Shown: positions 46,577 to 55,240, counted from the first letter of the stretch. The stretch: 64,000 nt of DNA from Basidiobolus meristosporus CBS 931.73 (GCA_002104905.1 MCFE01000048.1:124001-188000), one strand, 5' to 3'. Translations and numbers: made by a program. Notes: a model not told the origin generated them from the letters alone.

Positions 46577-47644
46577 ATGAGAATGAGATTCGATATCTGT
46601 ATGTTGGTTTTGGCCGTCTGCACATCAAGTGGGTTGGCTCAGGATACCGCTGCCTCTAGTGAACTGCACCCCATTAACCAGGCGTGGACAAAGCAATACG
46701 ACCTTTCCAAAGTCCCAAACAAGCCCTTGAGGCCGGTTGGATCTGGTACTTGCAAGACTTCAAATTGCGGGCCAGATGAATGTGACAAATGCTTCGAAAG
46801 CTGTGGCAACTGTCCAGTAAAGGATGATGTCTACGGCTGTGGTGCTGGTCAGTGGGCCCTGACATTCGATGATGGCCCGTCAAATTTTACCACTCAGCTG
46901 CTTGACATCCTGGCTGCGGCAAAAGTCAAAGCCACCTTCCTGATGGTTGGCTCGAATGTCGTCAAGTATCCCGAGGTGGTCAAGAGGGCGTACGACGAGG
47001 GCCATCAGATCTCGCAGCACACCTGGTCGCATCCGCACCTGATGAGCATCTCCAACGAGCAGATTGTGGCTGAGGTTCGAGCCACCGAGGAGGCGATCTT
47101 CAACGTCACTGGTGCACGCACAGCGTTCATTCGGCCCCCCTACGGTGAGGCGGATGACCGAGTCAAGGGAGTGTTCAAGGCCATGGGCTACTACAACCTA
47201 CTCTGGAACATGGACACGTTGGATTGGGACATTGTTGCAAAGAAACAAGACCCAGATAACATTCTCAATTCCTTTAAAAACGTCTTGGCTAAAGGCACGG
47301 ATTTGAACCCATTCAATAACCCAGGCTACATTTCACTCCAACACGACCTTTATGTCGAAACCGTCAAGCGGGTTCCCTCCATTGAACAGCTGTTGGAGCA
47401 AAAGAATTTCCATTTTGTACTGGCGCATGAATGCATCAATGTATCGCCTTATCAAAACATCGCCCAGCAGGATACCAAGACCGCAACACCAACCACCGAG
47501 GCTCATGCTTCCAGCTCTAAGGCGACCTCGCCAACCCACGACACTGTTGCCGTCCAGGGGGTTTCTGGGGCACCAGGGTTGTCCCAACCTGGTGTAATGG
47601 TCGCTTTGGTACTATTCATCTCTTCCGCTATCTTTTCTTGTTAA
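46577..47644 (+). CDS. Chitin deacetylase CDA1 (CE4/NodB), secreted, probably GPI-anchored
   Basis: Signal peptide; Cys-rich leader; TFDDGP, HTWSH, RPPYG, DTLDW and LQHD motifs; S/T stalk; hydrophobic C-terminus. Intronless. Confidence 0.93.
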   Translation: MRMRFDICMLVLAVCTSSGLAQDTAASSELHPINQAWTKQYDLSKVPNKPLRPVGSGTCKTSNCGPDECDKCFESCGNCPVKDDVYGCGAGQWALTFDDGPSNFTTQLLDILAAAKVKATFLMVGSNVVKYPEVVKRAYDEGHQISQHTWSHPHLMSISNEQIVAEVRATEEAIFNVTGARTAFIRPPYGEADDRVKGVFKAMGYYNLLWNMDTLDWDIVAKKQDPDNILNSFKNVLAKGTDLNPFNNPGYISLQHDLYVETVKRVPSIEQLLEQKNFHFVLAHECINVSPYQNIAQQDTKTATPTTEAHASSSKATSPTHDTVAVQGVSGAPGLSQPGVMVALVLFISSAIFSC

Positions 47645-48331
47645 ATTCCGCACTACACCGTTGCTTGTTCGTTTCCCTAATACCTACACATACCTTGTAT
47701 ACTCGATATATTACATCTTGCACCCAGTTTGAAAAATATATAACAATAAAGTGCCACGTGGGTAATTTACATCGTATTGATTGACGGGCATCTGATCGAC
47801 CGGCCACGGAGTACGATTAATCGATGGTACGACCCAATCAGATATATGGAGCAAACTCAAAGCTATATATATCTCTCGGTTCCACACACGCCTAAACATA
47901 ACAACTATGGAGGAATTGATTTTGGTGGAATACCTGAATCCACTTCCCTCACATTAATCTTCGATGGGCGCCAACCAAGTCCGGCATGAAATCTAGAATT
48001 TCCCAATCCGGACAAAGCCCAAGGTCTATCACCACATATACGGCTTCGATATCGACCAGTATGGTATCTTTCGTCACAACACCACCAACGCAATCATTTT
48101 CATATCTGGGAGAGACTCAAATATGCTGGACCAAACTTTACGCCCACAGCCGATGGAGTCGATGTGGCTGCGCACATATCCAACATCAGTGTTGTCATGG
48201 GCTTTCGCGTTGCCTCACAATGGACTCCTTGTTCAACGAGCCTAGAGCTTTTCGGCGGAGGCGGGATTGCTGTGTATATAAGCACATGCATCAGACGTGA
48301 ATGGACTAACATCTAGTGTCATTTCAAAGTA

Positions 48332-49438
48332 ATGAAGTTCCCGATAATCTTAGCTTTAATTGCATGTGCCAGGAACATTTTGGCCGAAGGTGATTCCGAT
48401 GGTGAGCCGTATCCCGTGAATCCCACCTGGACAAAGGAGTATGATCTCTCCAAGGTACCTGACAAGTCTCTAAGACCTGTCGGGTCCGGTATCTGCAAGA
48501 ATGCCAACTGTGGGCCTGATGATTGCGATAAGTGCTTCGAAAGCTGCGGGAACTGTCCAGTAAAGGATGATGTCTACGGCTGTGGTGCTGGTCAGTGGGC
48601 CCTGACATTCGACGACGGCCCGTCAGAATACACCACCCAGCTGCTTGACATCCTGGCTGCAGCAAAAGTCAAAGCCACCTTCCTGATGGTTGGCTCGAAT
48701 GTCGTCAAGTATCCCGAGGTGGTCAAGAGGGCGTACGACGAGGGCCATCAGATCTCGCAGCACACCTGGTCGCATCCGCACCTGATGAGCATCTCCAACG
48801 AGCAGATTGTGGCTGAGGTTCGAGCCACCGAGGAGGCGATCTTCAACGTCACTGGTGCACGCACAGCGTTCATTCGGCCCCCCTACGGTGAGGCGGATGA
48901 CCGAGTCAAGGGAGTGTTCAAGGCCATGGGCTACCATAACCTACTCTGGAACATGGACACCTTGGATTGGAGCATCGTTGAAAAGAAGCAAGACCCGGAC
49001 AAGATCCTTGACTCATTTGAAAAGGCATTGAGCAAGGGAACAGATCTGAACCCGTTTGAGAATCCCGGATATATTTCCCTCCAGCACGACCTCTATGTAG
49101 AGACAGTGAAGCGCGTGCCCAAGATCGAGCAGCTTTTGGCCCAGCATGGGTTCCACTTTGTTCTTACTCATGAATGTATCAATGCCCCTCCGTACCAAAA
49201 TTCCCCCACAGGTAACTCGACCCAAACCTCGTCGAGTATTCCAACCAGTACTGCCTTGGCATCGGCAACGGCATCAAGAACCGGATCAACGTCCAAGGCT
49301 TCGTCGAAACCATCTCTTCCAACCACTGGGACAAATTCTAATGCTCACATAGCATCTAGTGGTAACATCCTAATGAGCTCCAATGATCTTATCAAGTTGG
49401 CTACATATGTGGCAATCCTTGCTGGACTATCCAGATAA
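48332..49438 (+). CDS. Chitin deacetylase CDA2, probably GPI-anchored
   Basis: Same five CE4 motifs, signal peptide, S/T stalk and hydrophobic tail. Confidence 0.93.
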   Translation: MKFPIILALIACARNILAEGDSDGEPYPVNPTWTKEYDLSKVPDKSLRPVGSGICKNANCGPDDCDKCFESCGNCPVKDDVYGCGAGQWALTFDDGPSEYTTQLLDILAAAKVKATFLMVGSNVVKYPEVVKRAYDEGHQISQHTWSHPHLMSISNEQIVAEVRATEEAIFNVTGARTAFIRPPYGEADDRVKGVFKAMGYHNLLWNMDTLDWSIVEKKQDPDKILDSFEKALSKGTDLNPFENPGYISLQHDLYVETVKRVPKIEQLLAQHGFHFVLTHECINAPPYQNSPTGNSTQTSSSIPTSTALASATASRTGSTSKASSKPSLPTTGTNSNAHIASSGNILMSSNDLIKLATYVAILAGLSR

Positions 49439-49724
49439 TCCCAGTAAAATCCCGACCATTTCCAAATCCATTTCATCAGACCACGTTGTTCAGTCCCATT
49501 ATACACACAGCCGGTGAAAGCTAAGATTTAATAAATCATCCGCATTCTTAGATCCCGCAAATTGCCGATTGTCATACTCACAATTCAGTTCAATGCACAT
49601 TGTGCAAACCCATTTGTGTCGAGCGATTCGGTAGTGAAGGTTGGATGTTAGCAATCGAACGCCAAATCCGACTTAAGCTCGCCATTTCATGCTCGTTATC
49701 GCATCCGAACCTCGTTCCAACCCG

Positions 49725-50760
49725 ATGAAATTTCACGCCACCCTACTCTTGTTTACCACAGTTTGATGTTTGGATGCTTTAACCCAGGGACGAATAAAGG
49801 ACGATTCCCTGTACCCAGTTAATCCTGATTGGACCAATCAATATGCCCTTTCTTTCGTCCCTACTAATCCATTGAGATCTGTTGGATCTGGGATTTGTAA
49901 GAATGCCACATGCGATGCTAACGACTGTGACCGCTGTTACGAAAGCTGCGGGAACTGTCCAGTAAAGGATGATGTCTTTGGCTGTGGTGCTGGTCAGTAG
50001 GCCCTGACATTCGACGACGGCCCGTCAGAATACACCACCCAGCTGCTTGGCATCCTGGCTGCAGCAAAAGTCAAAGCCACCTTCCTGATGGTTGGCTCGA
50101 ATGTCGTCAAGTATCCCGAGGTGGTCAAGAGGGCGTACGACGAGGGCCATCAGATCTCGCAGCACACCTGGTCACATCCGCACCTGATGAGCATCTCCAA
50201 CGAGCAGATTGTGGCTGAGGTTCGAGCCACCGAGGAGGCGATCTTCAACGTCACTGGTGCACGCACCGCGTTCATTCGGCCCCCCTACGGTGAGGCGGAT
50301 GACCGAGTCAAGGGAGTGTTCAAGGCTATGGGCTACCGCAATCTACTCTGGAACATAGACACCTTGGATTGGGACATTGTTGCAAAGAAATAAGATCCAA
50401 GCAAGATCATCGATTCATTCGAAAGCGCTCTAACGAAAGGGACAAGCCTCAGCCTATTCAACGATACAGGCTATATGTCGCTGTAACACGACCTCTATGT
50501 AGAAACCGTTAAGCGTGTTCGGAAGATCGAGGAGCTTCTAGAGCAGTATAGCTTTCACTTTGTCGTACCATACCAAATCAACCTCGGCGATAATCTGCTT
50601 TTCAGAGTCACTCCAACCCACGAGGGCGTCAGAGCGGGCTTGCCGGACATTCCCGAAACTTCCATAGCACAAACAAACAGTAATCAAGAGTCCAAGCCTC
50701 CGGTGGAGATTTCGTCTATTGCCATTGGTAGTCAAGCGGCATTTACCGCTCTCAATTGAT
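49725..50760 (+). pseudogene. Chitin deacetylase pseudogene
   Basis: ATG 49725 (MKFHATLLLFTTV*). In-frame stops at 49764, 49998, 50391 and 50484. Core about 98% identical to CDA2/CDA3. 3' end approximate. Confidence 0.92.
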
Positions 50761-51404
50761 TGCTTATATGGCGGCTCCCAAATTTCTCAGATACTTTAGA
50801 CTTCAGACTGGTACCTTCAAATACAACCTAGAATCTAAAAGAACCCATACCAGATCGTGTAAAATTGGTGATGCTGTCCTATGTATAGATTAGCATTGCT
50901 GCCTGAAAGGATCCAGCAGATTAGGCCGTGACTTGTAATAAATCCATGCATCTCATTAAATCTCCACGTGAGCCACATCCCGCCCAACTAGCCAATCATC
51001 GAAGGTGTCGAACGCGAATGGCATAGGAAATCAAACACCACTCCCATTTTATCCTAATTAAGCAACATCTGCGTAGAAATTGTAACTCAGGTCGTCGGAG
51101 AGAAATAGGGAAAACGTAATGCAACCGAGAAAACTTAATATCGGGTAAACTCCCGTCTTCACGTCATCTACGCCAATATTCCGGTTGAACGAGATCTTTG
51201 GGGAGACAAGTCAATTCATTCAACATGCGGTGATGATTTTCATCCACGCCAACAAATATTCCAAAAGGAGGAGACTCAAGGTGTTTGTGCATCGCAATCT
51301 AGAGGTTCCAAAACTACATTTCAATCTCAGAGAAGTATAAGAAGTGGGGTTGAGTATTGTGGGAGAAGTTATCCCTTGAAGAGTCTGCCGAAATCCCTAG
51401 GAAT

Positions 51405-52463
51405 ATGAGGGCTTTTTCGTTTGTCTTGGTTACCTGCTTCTCTGCCATTATGGCTGAGGAAAACGGACTTCACCCAGTAAGACCTGAATGGACCAAGCAG
51501 TATAACCTTTCTCAAGTTCCCAACAAGCCCTTGAGGCCGGTCGGATCTGGTATCTGCAAGAATGCCAACTGTGGGCCTGATGATTGCGATAAGTGCTTCG
51601 AAAGCTGCGGGAACTGTCCAGTAAAGGATGATGTCTACGGCTGTGGTGCTGGTCAGTGGGCCCTGACATTCGACGACGGCCCGTCAGAATACACCACCCA
51701 GCTGCTTGACATCCTGGCTGCAGCAAAAGTCAAAGCCACCTTCCTGATGGTTGGCTCGAATGTCGTCAAGTATCCCGAGGTGGTCAAGAGGGCGTACGAC
51801 GAGGGCCATCAGATCTCGCAGCACACCTGGTCGCATCCGCACCTGATGAGCATCTCCAACGAGCAGATTGTGGCTGAGGTTCGAGCCACCGAGGAGGCGA
51901 TCTTCAACGTCACTGGTGCACGCACAGCGTTCATTCGGCCCCCCTACGGTGAGGCGGATGACCGAGTCAAGGGAGTGTTCAAGGCCATGGGCTACCGCAA
52001 CCTACTCTGGAACATGGACACGTTGGATTGGGATATCGTTGAAAAGAAGAAGAATCCGGATAATATCCTCGAGTCCTTCAAGAATGCTCTGGCCAAGGAT
52101 ACAGGGCTGAATCCTTTCCAAGACCCAGGCTACATTTCCCTCCAGCACGACCTCTATGTAGAGACAGTGAAGCGCGTTCCGAAAATCGAGGAGCTTTTGG
52201 CTCAACACGGGTTCCATTTTGAACTTGCCCACGCCTGTGTTAATCTTCCACCCTACCAAAACAAAGTAAACCAAACCACCGTCACTTCCACTCTTCCTTC
52301 CCCCTCCACATCATACAGCGCAACTACCACTAGCGGTCAAGATCCTACTCCCAAGGCTAACGCTGATGGTCAAGCTAAGATCGAGGCTACCTCGATGGGA
52401 GCAAAACTTTTGCACCCTTTAACATTAATTCCCTTGAGTGCCATTGCTTTGACGCGCTTGTAA
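51405..52463 (+). CDS. Chitin deacetylase CDA3, probably GPI-anchored
   Basis: ATG 51405 (MRAFSFVLVTCFSAIMA), five CE4 motifs, S/T stalk and hydrophobic tail. Confidence 0.93.
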   Translation: MRAFSFVLVTCFSAIMAEENGLHPVRPEWTKQYNLSQVPNKPLRPVGSGICKNANCGPDDCDKCFESCGNCPVKDDVYGCGAGQWALTFDDGPSEYTTQLLDILAAAKVKATFLMVGSNVVKYPEVVKRAYDEGHQISQHTWSHPHLMSISNEQIVAEVRATEEAIFNVTGARTAFIRPPYGEADDRVKGVFKAMGYRNLLWNMDTLDWDIVEKKKNPDNILESFKNALAKDTGLNPFQDPGYISLQHDLYVETVKRVPKIEELLAQHGFHFELAHACVNLPPYQNKVNQTTVTSTLPSPSTSYSATTTSGQDPTPKANADGQAKIEATSMGAKLLHPLTLIPLSAIALTRL

Positions 52464-53159: not shown

Positions 53160-54221
53160 ATGAGATTCGTCTCCATTGGACTGTTGCTTGCCTTGCTCGG
53201 TCTAGCACAACTAGCTAGATCGCAGGAGGCTGCTTCGAGCGAGTTAGCCAAAATCAATTCGCAATGGATGAAGCAATACGATCTCTCCAAAGTGCCGAGC
53301 ATCGCGCCCAAAAAAGTGGGCTCTGGAACCTGTACCAACAGTGCTTGCGGCCCCACTGATTGCGACAAATGCTGGGAAAGCTGCGGTAACTGTGCCTTGC
53401 TGGACGATGTCTATGGATGCACGGCGGGTAAATGGGCCCTGTCATTCGATGATGGCCCATCGAACTATACAATGCAGCTGTTGGATATTCTTGCTGCAGC
53501 CAAGGTGAAGGCGACCTTCCTGATGATCGGCTCGCAAGTGACTCAGTTTCCTGATGCAGTCAAGAGAGCTTTCAATGAGGGCCACCAGATCGCATCTCAC
53601 TCATGGTCTCATCCTCATCTGATGTCACTCTCCAATGAGCAGATTGTGGCGGAAGTCAAGTCTACCGAGGATGCAATCGTGAACATCACTGGGGTCAGGC
53701 CAGCATTTATCCGGCCGCCGTATGGCGAGGCTGACGGCCGTGTCAAGGCGATTTTCAAAGCTATGGGGTACAGCAATTTGCTGTGGAACATGGATACTTT
53801 GGACTGGGACATTGTGGCCAAAAAGGAGAGCCCAGCCTTGATCCTCAACTCGTTCACAGCAGCACTGACTAATGGCACCTCTTTAAACGCACACAGCGAC
53901 CCAGGGTATATCTCATTGCAGCATGATATTTACATAGACACAGTCAAGGAAGTACCATCCATAGAAAAGTTGTTGATACAGCATAACTTCACCTTCGTGC
54001 TTGCCCATGAGTGCATCAACCGACCACCATACCAAGGAAATGTCCCCAGTACCAACTCTACATCAAGCGCTGCCAGTAGAACAAGCACCAGTTCAGCCGC
54101 TTCAACCAGTGTGCCCGTCTCCGCCGTCGAGCTGCCTGCCAAATCGGAGTCCACTACGAACTACCAGGGCTCTTTAGTCTTCATCTTAAGCGCATTTGGT
54201 GCCCTTTTGACATATTTATAA
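53160..54221 (+). CDS. Chitin deacetylase CDA4 (more divergent paralog), probably GPI-anchored
   Basis: SFDDGP, HSWSH, RPPYG, DTLDW and LQHD; signal peptide; S/T stalk; hydrophobic tail. Synonymously diverged from CDA1-3 throughout. Confidence 0.93.
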   Translation: MRFVSIGLLLALLGLAQLARSQEAASSELAKINSQWMKQYDLSKVPSIAPKKVGSGTCTNSACGPTDCDKCWESCGNCALLDDVYGCTAGKWALSFDDGPSNYTMQLLDILAAAKVKATFLMIGSQVTQFPDAVKRAFNEGHQIASHSWSHPHLMSLSNEQIVAEVKSTEDAIVNITGVRPAFIRPPYGEADGRVKAIFKAMGYSNLLWNMDTLDWDIVAKKESPALILNSFTAALTNGTSLNAHSDPGYISLQHDIYIDTVKEVPSIEKLLIQHNFTFVLAHECINRPPYQGNVPSTNSTSSAASRTSTSSAASTSVPVSAVELPAKSESTTNYQGSLVFILSAFGALLTYL

Positions 54222-54465: not shown

Positions 54466-55240
54466 TCAAGCATAGAGTCCGTTATCCTGCAGGCATTGGG
54501 GTACAGTTACAACTCTATATCTAGTGTCTCGGACTTTCTTGAGGATATCTCGGACTGCCCTAATGGTGGGAGCGTGGACGTCGTGTTGCAAGGAGATGTA
54601 GTTGCTGCTGTTGGGTGGGTTTTTATCCAAGACGTTGTATGCGCTAACAGTTGCTTGGGTGCTTTGGGTTTTCCAATCCAGAGTATCCAAGTTCCAGTAA
54701 ATCACTTTGTATCCTAGTCTTTTGAGCACAGCGAGGACCCGATCATCGCATTCACCATATGGGCAACGCATATATCTAGGACGAACCTTAATGGCTCTAT
54801 AAATGGCATCCGAAGATCTCCTCATTTCACGCTCGATTCCGGCGGTGTCCAGCTCGTTGAGATTTGCGTGAGAATACGTATGGGAGGCAATATGATGCCC
54901 ACGGCGGTACATCTCCCGAACAATTTCCGGGTACTTATCTACATCTTGATCATGGTGCATCGGTTAGCATCTGATTAAAAAAAGCAGGTTGATGGCTCAT
55001 TATATTATTACTTTCTCCAACCAAAAAGAACGTCACCCTGGTATTTCCCAGAATGTTTAGTAGTTCTTGAGTAAAGCTTCCTGGTCCATCGTCAAATGTG
55101 ATCGCTACTACTCCATTTGTGGAGCATTCGCTGATTTGAACACCAAGAGGTGCGGCCCGTTTCCTAATACCAGCGGCACCAATCTGCGAAACACCAACGA
55201 GCCCAAGGATCAAGATAGAGATGTTCGACAGGAAGCGCAT
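54466..55240 (-). CDS. Polysaccharide/chitin deacetylase CDA5, secreted, no GPI tail, one intron
   Basis: MRFLSNISILILGLVGV signal; TFDDGP; spliced LVGE|NVDKYPE; HTYSH, RCPYG, DTLDW and LQHD; ends VTVPQCLQDNGLYA*. Confidence 0.88.

What the first reader, a model, noticed from the sequence alone, without database searches (positions are those of the whole stretch)
46577..52463. Chitin deacetylase array with a nucleotide-identical catalytic cassette and divergent flanks
Seen: CDA2 48488-48935 and CDA3 51549-51996 are identical over 448 bp. A 273-bp sub-block is also identical in CDA1 (46919-47191). Signal peptides, S/T stalks, GPI tails and intergenic DNA are not alignable at the DNA level. Identity includes all synonymous sites, which protein-level selection cannot explain. 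The block spans CE4 motifs 1-3 (TFDDGP, HTWSH, RPPYG). Inference: recurrent intragenic gene conversion keeps one catalytic core uniform while leaders and anchors diversify, giving a modular family of cell-surface chitosan-forming enzymes. I know of no description of this for fungal CDAs.
Basis: partly seen in the sequence, partly recalled or inferred. Interest (0 to 1): 0.8.

Follow-up and report, generated by a model that had tools for sequence, protein, structure and literature searches.

The report
Gene conversion in chitin deacetylase array
Neighbouring chitin deacetylase genes of the fungus Basidiobolus meristosporus keep overwriting the same few hundred bases of each other's enzyme core while the rest of each gene drifts apart; this is a clean, thrice-replicated example of a well-known process (gene conversion), not a new mechanism.

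Summary
Window 48488-48935 equals 51549-51996 (448 bp, no mismatch), and 46919-47191 equals both over 273 bp.

The array is larger than reported. It holds five same-strand CE4 genes (C1-C5) and a sixth, distant one on the minus strand. C3 is a pseudogene with four premature stops that still carries the cassette. C5 does not carry it.

The window is Basidiobolus meristosporus CBS 931.73, scaffold MCFE01000048.1, a PacBio assembly.

Two comparison arrays show the same thing independently: a duplicated copy of the region on scaffold MCFE01000065.1, and the B. ranarum array.
- Leaders, tails and the C-terminal half cluster by position in the array.
- The core clusters by array. AU tests reject the opposite groupings (p from 7e-4 to 7e-59).
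- Core dS is 0 of 62 synonymous sites within an array, against about 0.9 between the two B. meristosporus arrays.
- Short-read contigs break exactly at the tract borders, and the core has about 2.5 times the depth of the flanks. An assembly artefact is therefore unlikely.

Recurrent interlocus gene conversion is well supported. The adaptive "modular family" reading is not: the tract stops inside the NodB domain, before motifs 4 and 5, and also covers a pseudogene.

The scan noted this stretch twice. It also noted two other paralogue pairs in this genome with identical inner tracts, which I did not check.

Known kind, new member.

The parts
46577..47644 (+). C1, slot-1 CE4 chitin deacetylase gene. 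Intronless, 355 aa. By homology to M1 and R1 the start is more likely the ATG at 46583.
   Evidence: ORF. PF01522, E=5e-38. All five CE4 motifs present. Leader and tail are orthologous to M1 and R1.
46919..47191 (+). Converted tract in C1: 273 bp identical to C2 and C4. It covers motifs 2 and 3 but not motif 1.
   Evidence: A further patch, alignment columns 267-328, is also identical to C4.
48332..49438 (+). C2, slot-2 CE4 chitin deacetylase gene (368 aa). It is the most abundantly represented copy in the cDNA-like run.
   Evidence: ORF. PF01522, E=3e-38. Best solved relative is 5lfz, E=4e-34. One 1249-nt contig of run X3 covers 48322-49543 at depth 3177 with 0 differences.
48488..48935 (+). 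Converted tract in C2: 448 bp identical to C4. It covers the Cys-rich N-terminal segment and CE4 motifs 1-3.
   Evidence: Short-read contigs stop 30 nt (k-1) inside its left border. The core contig has depth 395 against about 150 in the flanks.
49725..50759 (+). C3ps, slot-3 pseudogene. In-frame stops at 49764 (TGA), 49998 (TAG, replacing the W of GQWALTFDDGP), 50391 (TAA) and 50484 (TAA). The hydrophobic tail is lost. Its homeologue M2 and orthologue R3 are intact.
   Evidence: The public annotation calls only a 101-aa fragment.
49940..50372 (+). Converted tract in the pseudogene C3ps: 10 differences from C4 in 433 bp. Upstream of it the sequence follows slot-3 orthology (M2, R3). One of the stops (49998) lies inside the tract.
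51405..52463 (+). C4, slot-4 CE4 chitin deacetylase gene (352 aa from the ATG at 51405).
51549..51996 (+). Converted tract in C4, 448 bp identical to C2.
   Evidence: The short-read contig 50297-51578 ends 30 nt inside it. The core contig 51612-51985 has depth 376.
53160..54221 (+). C5, slot-5 CE4 gene (353 aa). It lies outside the conversion group: core identity to C1-C4 is about 70%, and the longest identical run is 16 bp.
   Evidence: Slot-5 copies form their own clade in every partition, with support 100/100.
54466..55240 (-). Sixth, distant CE4 gene on the opposite strand: about 35% identical, one intron, 235-aa model. It is conserved at the same place in both comparison arrays and is not converted.
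   Evidence: tblastn. Gene models.
48935..48937 (+). Variable codon inside the otherwise uniform stretch: C2 CAT (His), C1 47192-47194 TAC (Tyr), C4 51996-51998 CGC (Arg). The next 23-35 nt are identical again.

Best explanation
This is a tandem array of secreted, probably GPI-anchored CE4 (NodB) chitin deacetylase genes. Slots 1-4 undergo recurrent interlocus (non-allelic) gene conversion.

Proposed mechanism (inferred): a break in one copy is repaired from a paralogue 1.4-3 kb away on the same chromatid or the sister chromatid. This copies a few hundred bases and leaves both flanks of the recipient in place.

Why the tract stays where it is (inferred): it overlaps the part of the gene under the strongest protein constraint, where between-array dN is about 0.02. 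That part therefore stays similar enough for strand invasion. The surrounding 20-35% divergence stops heteroduplex extension. The central roughly 270 bp is thus repeatedly homogenised while leaders, the C-terminal half of the domain, the Ser/Thr stalks, the tails and the spacers diverge. Slot 5 and the minus-strand gene are too divergent and have escaped.

Shown: the identity pattern, its independence in three arrays, the conflict between core and flank trees, and the reality of the repeat in reads.

Inferred: the repair pathway, the homology-limited borders, and the enzyme's role in making cell-wall chitosan.
For: 1. Identity. There are exact tracts of 448 and 273 bp inside genes whose flanks are 55-88% identical.

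2. Synonymous sites. 0 of 62 differ in the core for C1/C2/C4 and for M1/M2. The same core has dS 0.88-0.94 between the two B. meristosporus arrays and is saturated against B. ranarum. Selection on the protein or on codons therefore cannot explain the identity. Zero in 62 puts the last homogenisation at roughly under 5% of the age of the array duplication (my inference).

3. Three independent replicates.
- Scaffold 48: C1, C2, C3ps and C4.
- Scaffold 65: M1/M2, 299 bp identical, at L001 10256-10554 and 12536-12834.
- B. ranarum: R2/R4 have 399 bp identical, R1 is 95-100% and R3 is patchy.
- The longest identical run between arrays is 36 bp.

4. Trees. The C-flank groups slot 1 (95/95), slot 3 (94/94) and slot 5 (100/100) across arrays. 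The core groups by array (R1-R4 99/100; C1=C2=C4; M1=M2).

5. AU tests.
- The core rejects a slot-1 clade (p=5e-48) and a slot-3 clade (p=1e-4).
- The C-flank rejects array clades (p=7e-59, 3e-46, 7e-4).

6. Permutation test of the order of variable sites: P <= 2e-4 for C1/C2/C4 and M1/M2, P=6e-4 for R2/R4.

7. Both flanks of every recipient keep their slot identity, which fits conversion rather than a single crossover.

8. Tract ages and borders differ, with 5' borders at columns 204, about 254, 378 and 384. C3ps has 2% divergence and C1 has a patchy older zone. Hence several events.

9. The repeat is real.
- The assembly is PacBio (PMC7466969).
- Short-read contigs match the unique flanks with 0 differences and end exactly 30 nt into the tracts.
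- The core contigs have depth 376-395 against about 146-190 in the flanks.

10. Negative control. A tandem pair of CE4 genes at 75-80% core identity in a second B. ranarum region has no identical tract; the longest run is 14 nt.
Against: - No read-level long-read check was possible. The short-read runs are probably from the same strain as the assembly, so they are not independent of it.
- Contigs drop minority variants, so rare differences between cores cannot be excluded.
- The homology-limited explanation of the borders was not tested.
- Three tracts in scaffold 48 share nearly the same 3' end, and one codon inside the uniform stretch differs in all three functional copies. A purely mechanical model does not predict this.
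- A test for GC-biased conversion was negative or inconclusive.
- Only three arrays from two species were available.
Confidence: 0.87

Rival explanations
1. Assembly or polishing artefact. The real copies differ in the core, and consensus calling with mis-assigned reads made them identical.
For: - Exact identity over hundreds of bases in a repeat is what over-polishing can produce.
- The laid short-read runs X1 and X2 are probably from the sequenced strain, so they are not fully independent.
Against: - The assembly comes from PacBio reads, which are far longer than 448 bp and anchor in unique flanks (PMC7466969).
- Short-read de Bruijn contigs show no variant in the core and break exactly k-1 = 30 nt inside the tract borders.
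- The core has about 2.5 times the depth of the flanks, as expected for a true exact repeat.
- A single contig of run X3 runs through C2 from leader to 3' UTR with 0 differences.
- The same pattern is seen in a second scaffold and in an independently sequenced species.
Confidence: 0.03
2. One-off mosaic formation. A few recent unequal crossovers or segmental duplications created chimeric genes. On this reading there is no ongoing, recurrent conversion.
For: - Tandem direct repeats do undergo unequal crossing-over.
- The tandem pair on scaffold MCFE01000640.1 is 94% identical over its whole length, which looks like a recent duplication.
Against: - Each recipient keeps slot-specific sequence on both sides of the tract, which a single crossover cannot give.
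- The five-slot order is conserved between species.
- Tracts of different length and age are nested on the same core.
- Both B. meristosporus arrays, which are dS about 0.9 apart, have cores with zero synonymous differences. That is improbable for a rare one-off event.
Confidence: 0.06
3. Selection-maintained modularity. Conversion is favoured, or tolerated only in the core, because a uniform catalytic core combined with diversified leaders, anchors and promoters is advantageous.
For: - The same region is homogenised in three arrays.
- The copies differ greatly in abundance in the cDNA-like run: C2 depth 3177, C4 516, C1 25.
- One codon (Tyr/His/Arg) stays different inside the uniform stretch of scaffold 48.
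Against: - The tract ends inside the NodB domain, before motifs 4 and 5.
- The borders vary between pairs.
- A pseudogene is converted too.
- The flanks show dN well below dS, with no sign of positive selection.
- Earlier unchecked notes report similar inner tracts in unrelated gene pairs of this genome. That would suggest a general property of the genome rather than of this family.
Confidence: 0.12
4. Constraint on the DNA or RNA itself keeps every base of the core fixed, for example an overlapping antisense ORF, an RNA structure or extreme codon bias.
For: - Antisense ORFs of 104-113 aa overlap the C2 core at 48324-48665 and 48623-48937.
- Core GC3 is raised: 0.79 against 0.48-0.65 in the flanks.
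Against: - The same core differs at dS 0.88-0.94 between the two arrays of one genome and is saturated between species.
- C5 has the same protein motifs with about 70% DNA identity.
Confidence: 0.01
5. A variant of the mechanism: the donor is cDNA of the highly expressed copy (C2) rather than genomic DNA. This was proposed for fungal ribosomal protein paralogues.
For: - C2 is by far the most abundant copy in the cDNA-like run.
- cDNA donors were argued for ribosomal protein genes in fungi (PMC6993855, section list).
Against: - The genes have no introns, so the usual signature of intron loss or exclusion cannot be read.
- The tracts are internal and short, and do not reach the transcript ends.
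- Scaffold 65 lacks an intact slot-2 copy yet still shows conversion between M1 and M2.
Confidence: 0.08

Closest known systems
Interlocus gene conversion giving mosaic divergence in tandem paralogues (e.g. the three HMA4 copies of Arabidopsis halleri; bioRxiv 10.1101/2025.10.29.685298)
   Same: - Tandem same-strand paralogues.
- The effective conversion rate varies along the gene, so near-identical segments sit next to diverged ones (abstract).
   Different: - Here the copies are old. The slots predate the split of two species, and the flanks are saturated at synonymous sites.
- The homogenised part is only about 270-450 bp of a 1.1-kb intronless gene.
- The pattern is replicated in three arrays.
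Parallel concerted evolution of duplicated ribosomal protein genes in fungi (Mullis et al. 2019, PMC6993855)
   Same: Paralogues are homogenised by repeated gene conversion independently in several fungal lineages, so that paralogues cluster by species (abstract).
   Different: - Those pairs are mostly dispersed duplicates from whole-genome duplication or retroposition, converted over the coding sequence.
- Here the genes are a local tandem array of cell-wall enzyme genes, converted over part of one domain only.
Fungal CE4 chitin deacetylases with solved structures (Colletotrichum lindemuthianum 2IW0, Aspergillus nidulans 2Y8U, A. niger 7BLY) and the bacterial ArCE4A (5LFZ)
   Same: NodB domain with the five CE4 motifs. 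Sequence matches have E from 4e-34 to 3e-27.
   Different: - The Basidiobolus proteins add an N-terminal Cys-rich segment (seven Cys between about residues 55 and 84 of C2), a Ser/Thr-rich stalk and a hydrophobic C-terminal tail.
- Their activity is not tested.

Membership tests
CE4 / NodB polysaccharide (chitin) deacetylase | NodB homology domain (Pfam PF01522) above the curated threshold | tested here: met
   C1, C2, C4 and C5 score 128-132 bits against a cut-off of 23.1, with E from 1.5e-38 to 2.4e-37.
CE4 / NodB polysaccharide (chitin) deacetylase | Five catalytic motifs, including the Asp-His-His metal triad: TFDD, H(S/T)xxH, RxPY, DxxDW, LxH | tested here: met
   TFDDGP (SFDDGP in C5), HTWSH (HSWSH in C5), RPPYG, DTLDW and SLQHD are found in all four intact copies, with coordinates.
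CE4 / NodB polysaccharide (chitin) deacetylase | Sequence similarity to experimentally solved chitin deacetylases | tested here: met
   5lfz E=4e-34, 7bly 4e-31, 2y8u 1e-27, 2iw0 3e-27.
CE4 / NodB polysaccharide (chitin) deacetylase | Deacetylation of chitin rather than xylan or peptidoglycan | not testable with these tools
   Only annotation names of relatives are available ('chitin deacetylase'). The substrate is inferred.
GPI-anchored cell-surface protein | N-terminal signal peptide, Ser/Thr-rich stalk, and a C-terminal omega site followed by a hydrophobic tail | tested here: inconclusive
   Hydrophobic leaders, Ser+Thr fractions of 0.26-0.37 after residue 285, and hydrophobic last 15-20 residues are seen by eye. 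No signal-peptide or GPI predictor was available.
Interlocus gene conversion / concerted evolution | In the tract, paralogues of one array are closer to each other than to their positional orthologues, while the flanks follow orthology | tested here: met
   Trees. AU tests give p from 7e-4 to 7e-59 in both directions.
Interlocus gene conversion / concerted evolution | The identity includes synonymous sites and exceeds what site-order permutation gives | tested here: met
   0/62 synonymous differences against dS about 0.9 between arrays. Permutation P <= 2e-4.
Interlocus gene conversion / concerted evolution | The recipient keeps its own sequence on both sides of the tract (no crossover) | tested here: met
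   Leaders and tails are slot-specific on both sides for C1, C3ps, M1, M2 and R1-R4.
Interlocus gene conversion / concerted evolution | The repeat is real in the DNA, not produced by assembly | tested here: met
   PacBio origin. Short-read contig breaks and a 2.5-fold depth in the core. Raw long reads were not examined.
GC-biased gene conversion | Excess of weak-to-strong over strong-to-weak substitutions in converted versus unconverted sequence | tested here: not met
   - Core GC3 is higher in converted copies: 0.79 vs 0.63, 0.66 vs 0.58, and 0.44-0.49 vs 0.33.
- Polarised substitutions do not differ between core and flank, or between C1 core and C5 core (Fisher p = 1.0 and 0.69, small counts).
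Repeat-induced point mutation (RIP) as the cause of the pseudogene | Excess of C>T / G>A transitions in the repeated copy | tested here: not met
   C3ps lineage: 5 C>T/G>A, 15 T>C/A>G and 14 transversions. This is similar to the intact copies.

The most novel reading that the evidence does not exclude
The partial homogenisation may be more than a mechanical by-product. On this reading it is a long-lived, selection-shaped regime. Conversion keeps the metal-binding half of the enzyme uniform within each array. Selection holds slot-specific features against it: the Tyr/His/Arg codon inside the uniform stretch, the C-terminal half of the domain with motifs 4-5, the leaders, the anchors and the promoters. 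The array would then yield functionally distinct surface deacetylases built on one shared core. The converted pseudogene would act as a reservoir or sink of variants.
Probability: 0.12. Interest if true: 0.55.

Novelty: new member of a known kind. Interest (0 to 1): 0.36.

Why it matters
This is an unusually clean natural experiment on interlocus gene conversion in an early-diverging fungus. The array is old and has five slots with conserved order. Three replicate arrays each homogenise the same roughly 270-bp core while everything around it diverges. Built-in controls are present: slot 5, the minus-strand copy and a second B. ranarum region.

Practical consequences:
- Phylogenies and selection tests on Basidiobolus CE4 genes will be misled unless the core is masked.
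- Short-read assemblies will break or merge these genes.
- Copy-specific expression can only be read from the flanks.

For cell-wall biology it shows that several differently led, anchored and expressed deacetylases share an identical metal-binding half. It does not reveal a new mechanism.

Tried and rejected
- RIP as the cause of the slot-3 pseudogene: no C>T/G>A excess.
- GC-biased conversion: GC3 is raised in converted cores, but polarised W>S versus S>W counts do not differ from flanks or from unconverted C5. Left as inconclusive.
- Exchange between the two B. meristosporus arrays or with dispersed CE4 genes: the longest shared run is 36 bp. The singleton on scaffold MCFE01000685.1 and the pair on MCFE01000640.1 are only about 70-72% identical to the C2 and M1 domain sequences.
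- Constraint on the DNA from antisense ORFs: rejected by between-array dS.
- Subtelomeric setting: no TTAGGG repeats in the window. I could not read that DNA, so this stays a lead.
- Another isolate: run X4 gave only six short contigs at 90-95% identity.
  - Two of them end at 48488 and 48936.
  - Their letters match the scaffold-65 core (M1) at 17 of 27 sites where they differ from C2.
  - They are therefore probably the other array of a different isolate, and the coincidence of ends is weak evidence.
- Cluster look-up for proteins of further strains: only B. ranarum members were found.
- Literature: no paper in the held library links chitin deacetylases with gene conversion or concerted evolution. 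The co-occurrences are incidental.
- Structure prediction was not run, because it could not change the verdict.
- Read laying was given 5981 letters.

Full report
**What is there**

The stretch holds a tandem array of CE4 genes, not three genes. There are five same-strand copies:
- C1, 46577-47644
- C2, 48332-49438
- C3ps, 49725-50759
- C4, 51405-52463
- C5, 53160-54221

A sixth, distant copy lies on the minus strand at 54466-55240.

C1, C2, C4 and C5 each match Pfam PF01522 at E of about 1e-38. They carry all five CE4 motifs. They match solved chitin deacetylases at E from 4e-34 to 3e-27.

Each intact copy has four further features, read from the sequence only because no predictor was available:
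- a hydrophobic leader
- a Cys-rich N-terminal segment
- a Ser/Thr-rich stalk
- a hydrophobic tail

C3ps is a pseudogene with in-frame stops at 49764, 49998, 50391 and 50484 and a lost tail.

**The observation**

Window 48488-48935 and 51549-51996 are identical over 448 bp. Window 46919-47191 is identical to both over 273 bp. The pseudogene carries the same segment (49940-50372) with 10 differences in 433 bp. C5 is about 70% identical there, with no run longer than 16 bp.

Outside the tract, sliding-window identity falls to 55-88%. The spacers give no blastn hit to each other.

Motif 1 lies outside C1's 273-bp block. Motifs 4 and 5 lie outside the exact-identity blocks in every copy.

**Source**

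The window's own proteins map to Basidiobolus meristosporus CBS 931.73, assembly GCA_002104905.1, scaffold MCFE01000048.1 (196,824 bp). Record coordinate equals window coordinate plus 124,000. This genome was sequenced with PacBio (PMC7466969).

**Comparison arrays**

Both comparison regions share the neighbouring genes of the array.

1. The same assembly holds a second, diverged copy of the region on scaffold MCFE01000065.1 (locus L001).
   - It runs: AMP-binding gene, M1, a decayed remnant, M2, a decayed remnant, M5, the minus-strand CE4 gene, HlyIII.
2. B. ranarum contig JASJQH010000175.1 (locus L002) has five intact same-strand copies R1-R5.
   - They are followed by the minus-strand CE4 gene, a DWNN gene and HlyIII.

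Leaders and tails identify five positional slots:
- slot 1: C1 = M1 = R1
- slot 2: C2 = R2
- slot 3: C3ps = M2 = R3
- slot 4: C4 = R4
- slot 5: C5 = M5 = R5

The array therefore predates the split of the two species. Scaffolds 48 and 65 are old duplicates, not alleles: flank dS is about 0.9-2.4, with some flank segments saturated.

The same core is homogenised independently in each array.
- M1 and M2 share 299 identical bp (L001 10256-10554 and 12536-12834).
- R2 and R4 share 399 bp. R1 is 95-100% identical to them in the core and R3 is patchy.
- Between arrays the longest identical run is 36 bp.

Maximum-likelihood trees give the following:
- The C-terminal flank groups by slot: slot 1 at 95/95, slot 3 at 94/94, slot 5 at 100/100.
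- The core groups by array: R1-R4 at 99/100, C1=C2=C4, M1=M2.

AU tests reject the opposite topology both ways.
- The core rejects a slot-1 clade (p=5e-48) and a slot-3 clade (p=1e-4).
- The flank rejects array clades (p=7e-59, 3e-46, 7e-4).

Nei-Gojobori counts give 0 of about 62 synonymous differences in the core within an array. Between the two B. meristosporus arrays the core dS is 0.88-0.94, and against B. ranarum it is saturated. Paralogue flanks are saturated. A permutation of the order of variable sites gives P <= 2e-4.

This is the signature of concerted evolution by gene conversion. Because each recipient keeps its slot sequence on both sides, the events are conversions and not single unequal crossovers.

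**Recurrent or one-off**

Tracts of different length and age are nested on the same core.
- C2/C4: alignment columns 204-651, no difference.
- C1: columns 378-650, no difference. Further upstream C1 has an older patchy zone with dS 0.56.
- C3ps: columns about 254-686, 2% divergent.
- M1/M2: columns 384-682.
- B. ranarum: several grades of identity.

Zero synonymous differences in 62 sites bounds the last event at roughly dS below 0.05. That is under about 5% of the age of the scaffold 48/65 duplication (my inference). Finding both arrays in that state argues for frequent events.

**Is the repeat real?**

Short-read contigs of two runs (X1, X2, probably the sequenced strain) match the unique flanks with no difference at depth about 146-190. 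They end exactly 30 nt (k-1) inside the tracts, at 47200-48517 and 50297-51578. They give core contigs at depth 376-395, about 2.5 times the flank depth.

A third run (X3) has adapter-tailed contigs on genes only. It therefore looks like cDNA, although it is not on record as RNA. One 1249-nt contig covers C2 from 48322 to 49543 with no difference at depth 3177. It also has pieces of C4 (depth 516), C1 (25) and C3ps (17-21).

Together with the PacBio origin this makes an assembly artefact unlikely. Raw long reads were not examined.

**How it most likely works**

A break in one copy is repaired from a neighbouring paralogue without crossover. The tract stays within the part of the gene whose protein sequence is most constrained: core dN between arrays is about 0.02, against 0.04-0.2 in the flanks. 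That part is similar enough for strand invasion, and the divergent flanks stop extension. Once homogenised, the core is an even better substrate.

Copies that have diverged too far do not take part. These are slot 5, the minus-strand gene, and the two slot-5-like genes of a second B. ranarum region (L006).

This pathway and the homology-limited borders are inference.

**What does not fit an adaptive 'modular cassette'**

- The tract ends inside the NodB domain.
- The borders vary.
- A dead gene is converted, and one of its stops lies inside the tract.
- Earlier notes, which I did not check, report inner identical tracts in two unrelated paralogue pairs of this genome.

One detail remains unexplained. 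In scaffold 48 the only variable sites of C1, C2 and C4 across alignment columns 378-676 sit in one codon: Tyr, His and Arg at 47192-47194, 48935-48937 and 51996-51998. The next 23-35 nt are identical again.

**Novelty**

Searches of the held library found no paper linking chitin deacetylases with gene conversion or concerted evolution, and none on Basidiobolus CE4 arrays.

The process itself is well described. Examples are the mosaic divergence of tandem HMA4 copies (10.1101/2025.10.29.685298) and the parallel concerted evolution of fungal ribosomal protein paralogues (PMC6993855).

Verdict: real, well supported, a new member of a known kind, of moderate interest.

Noticed in passing
window 47192-47194, 48935-48937, 50337-50339, 51996-51998: One codon differs among the copies inside the otherwise uniform stretch: C1 TAC (Tyr), C2 CAT (His), C3ps and C4 CGC (Arg). 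The three variable sites of C1/C2/C4 across alignment columns 378-676 all fall in this codon. My estimate of the chance of that is about 2e-5. In the other arrays the codon is homogenised: M1=M2=Tyr, R1=R2=R4=His.
   Followed up: partly
L001 11430-11911 and 13650-14250 (scaffold MCFE01000065.1) versus window 49725-50759: Reciprocal decay after duplication of the region. Scaffold 65 keeps slot 3 intact (M2) and has heavily decayed remnants in slots 2 and 4. Scaffold 48 keeps slots 2 and 4 and has the pseudogene in slot 3.
   Followed up: partly
L005 8001-9173 and 10568-11715 (scaffold MCFE01000640.1): Another tandem CE4 pair in the same genome is 94% identical over its whole length, with a 479-bp identical run. 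The second copy is frame-shifted relative to the first in a straight read. This could be a recent duplication or a whole-gene conversion.
   Followed up: partly
L006 8711-9811 and 11230-12285 (B. ranarum JASJQH010007130.1): B. ranarum has a second copy of the region, between the AMP-binding gene and HlyIII. It holds only two CE4 genes, both slot-5-like, with no identical tract (longest run 14 nt). B. ranarum therefore also carries duplicated regions. The pair serves as a negative control.
   Followed up: yes
window 48322-49543: A single contig of run X3, probably cDNA, matches C2 exactly from 10 nt before the ATG to 105 nt after the stop, at very high depth (3177). C4, C1 and the pseudogene are far lower. 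C2 appears to be the dominant transcript of the array and is intronless.
   Followed up: partly
window 48324-48665 and 48623-48937, minus strand: Two antisense ORFs of 113 and 104 aa overlap the C2 core. I treated them as chance ORFs in GC-rich coding DNA. They cannot explain the identity, given the between-array divergence.
   Followed up: partly
window 46745-52036 (cores of C1-C4) versus 53325-53812 (C5): Third-position GC is higher in converted cores than in the unconverted slot-5 core in all three arrays: 0.79 vs 0.63, 0.66 vs 0.58, and 0.44-0.49 vs 0.33. A polarised substitution test did not support GC-biased conversion.
   Followed up: yes
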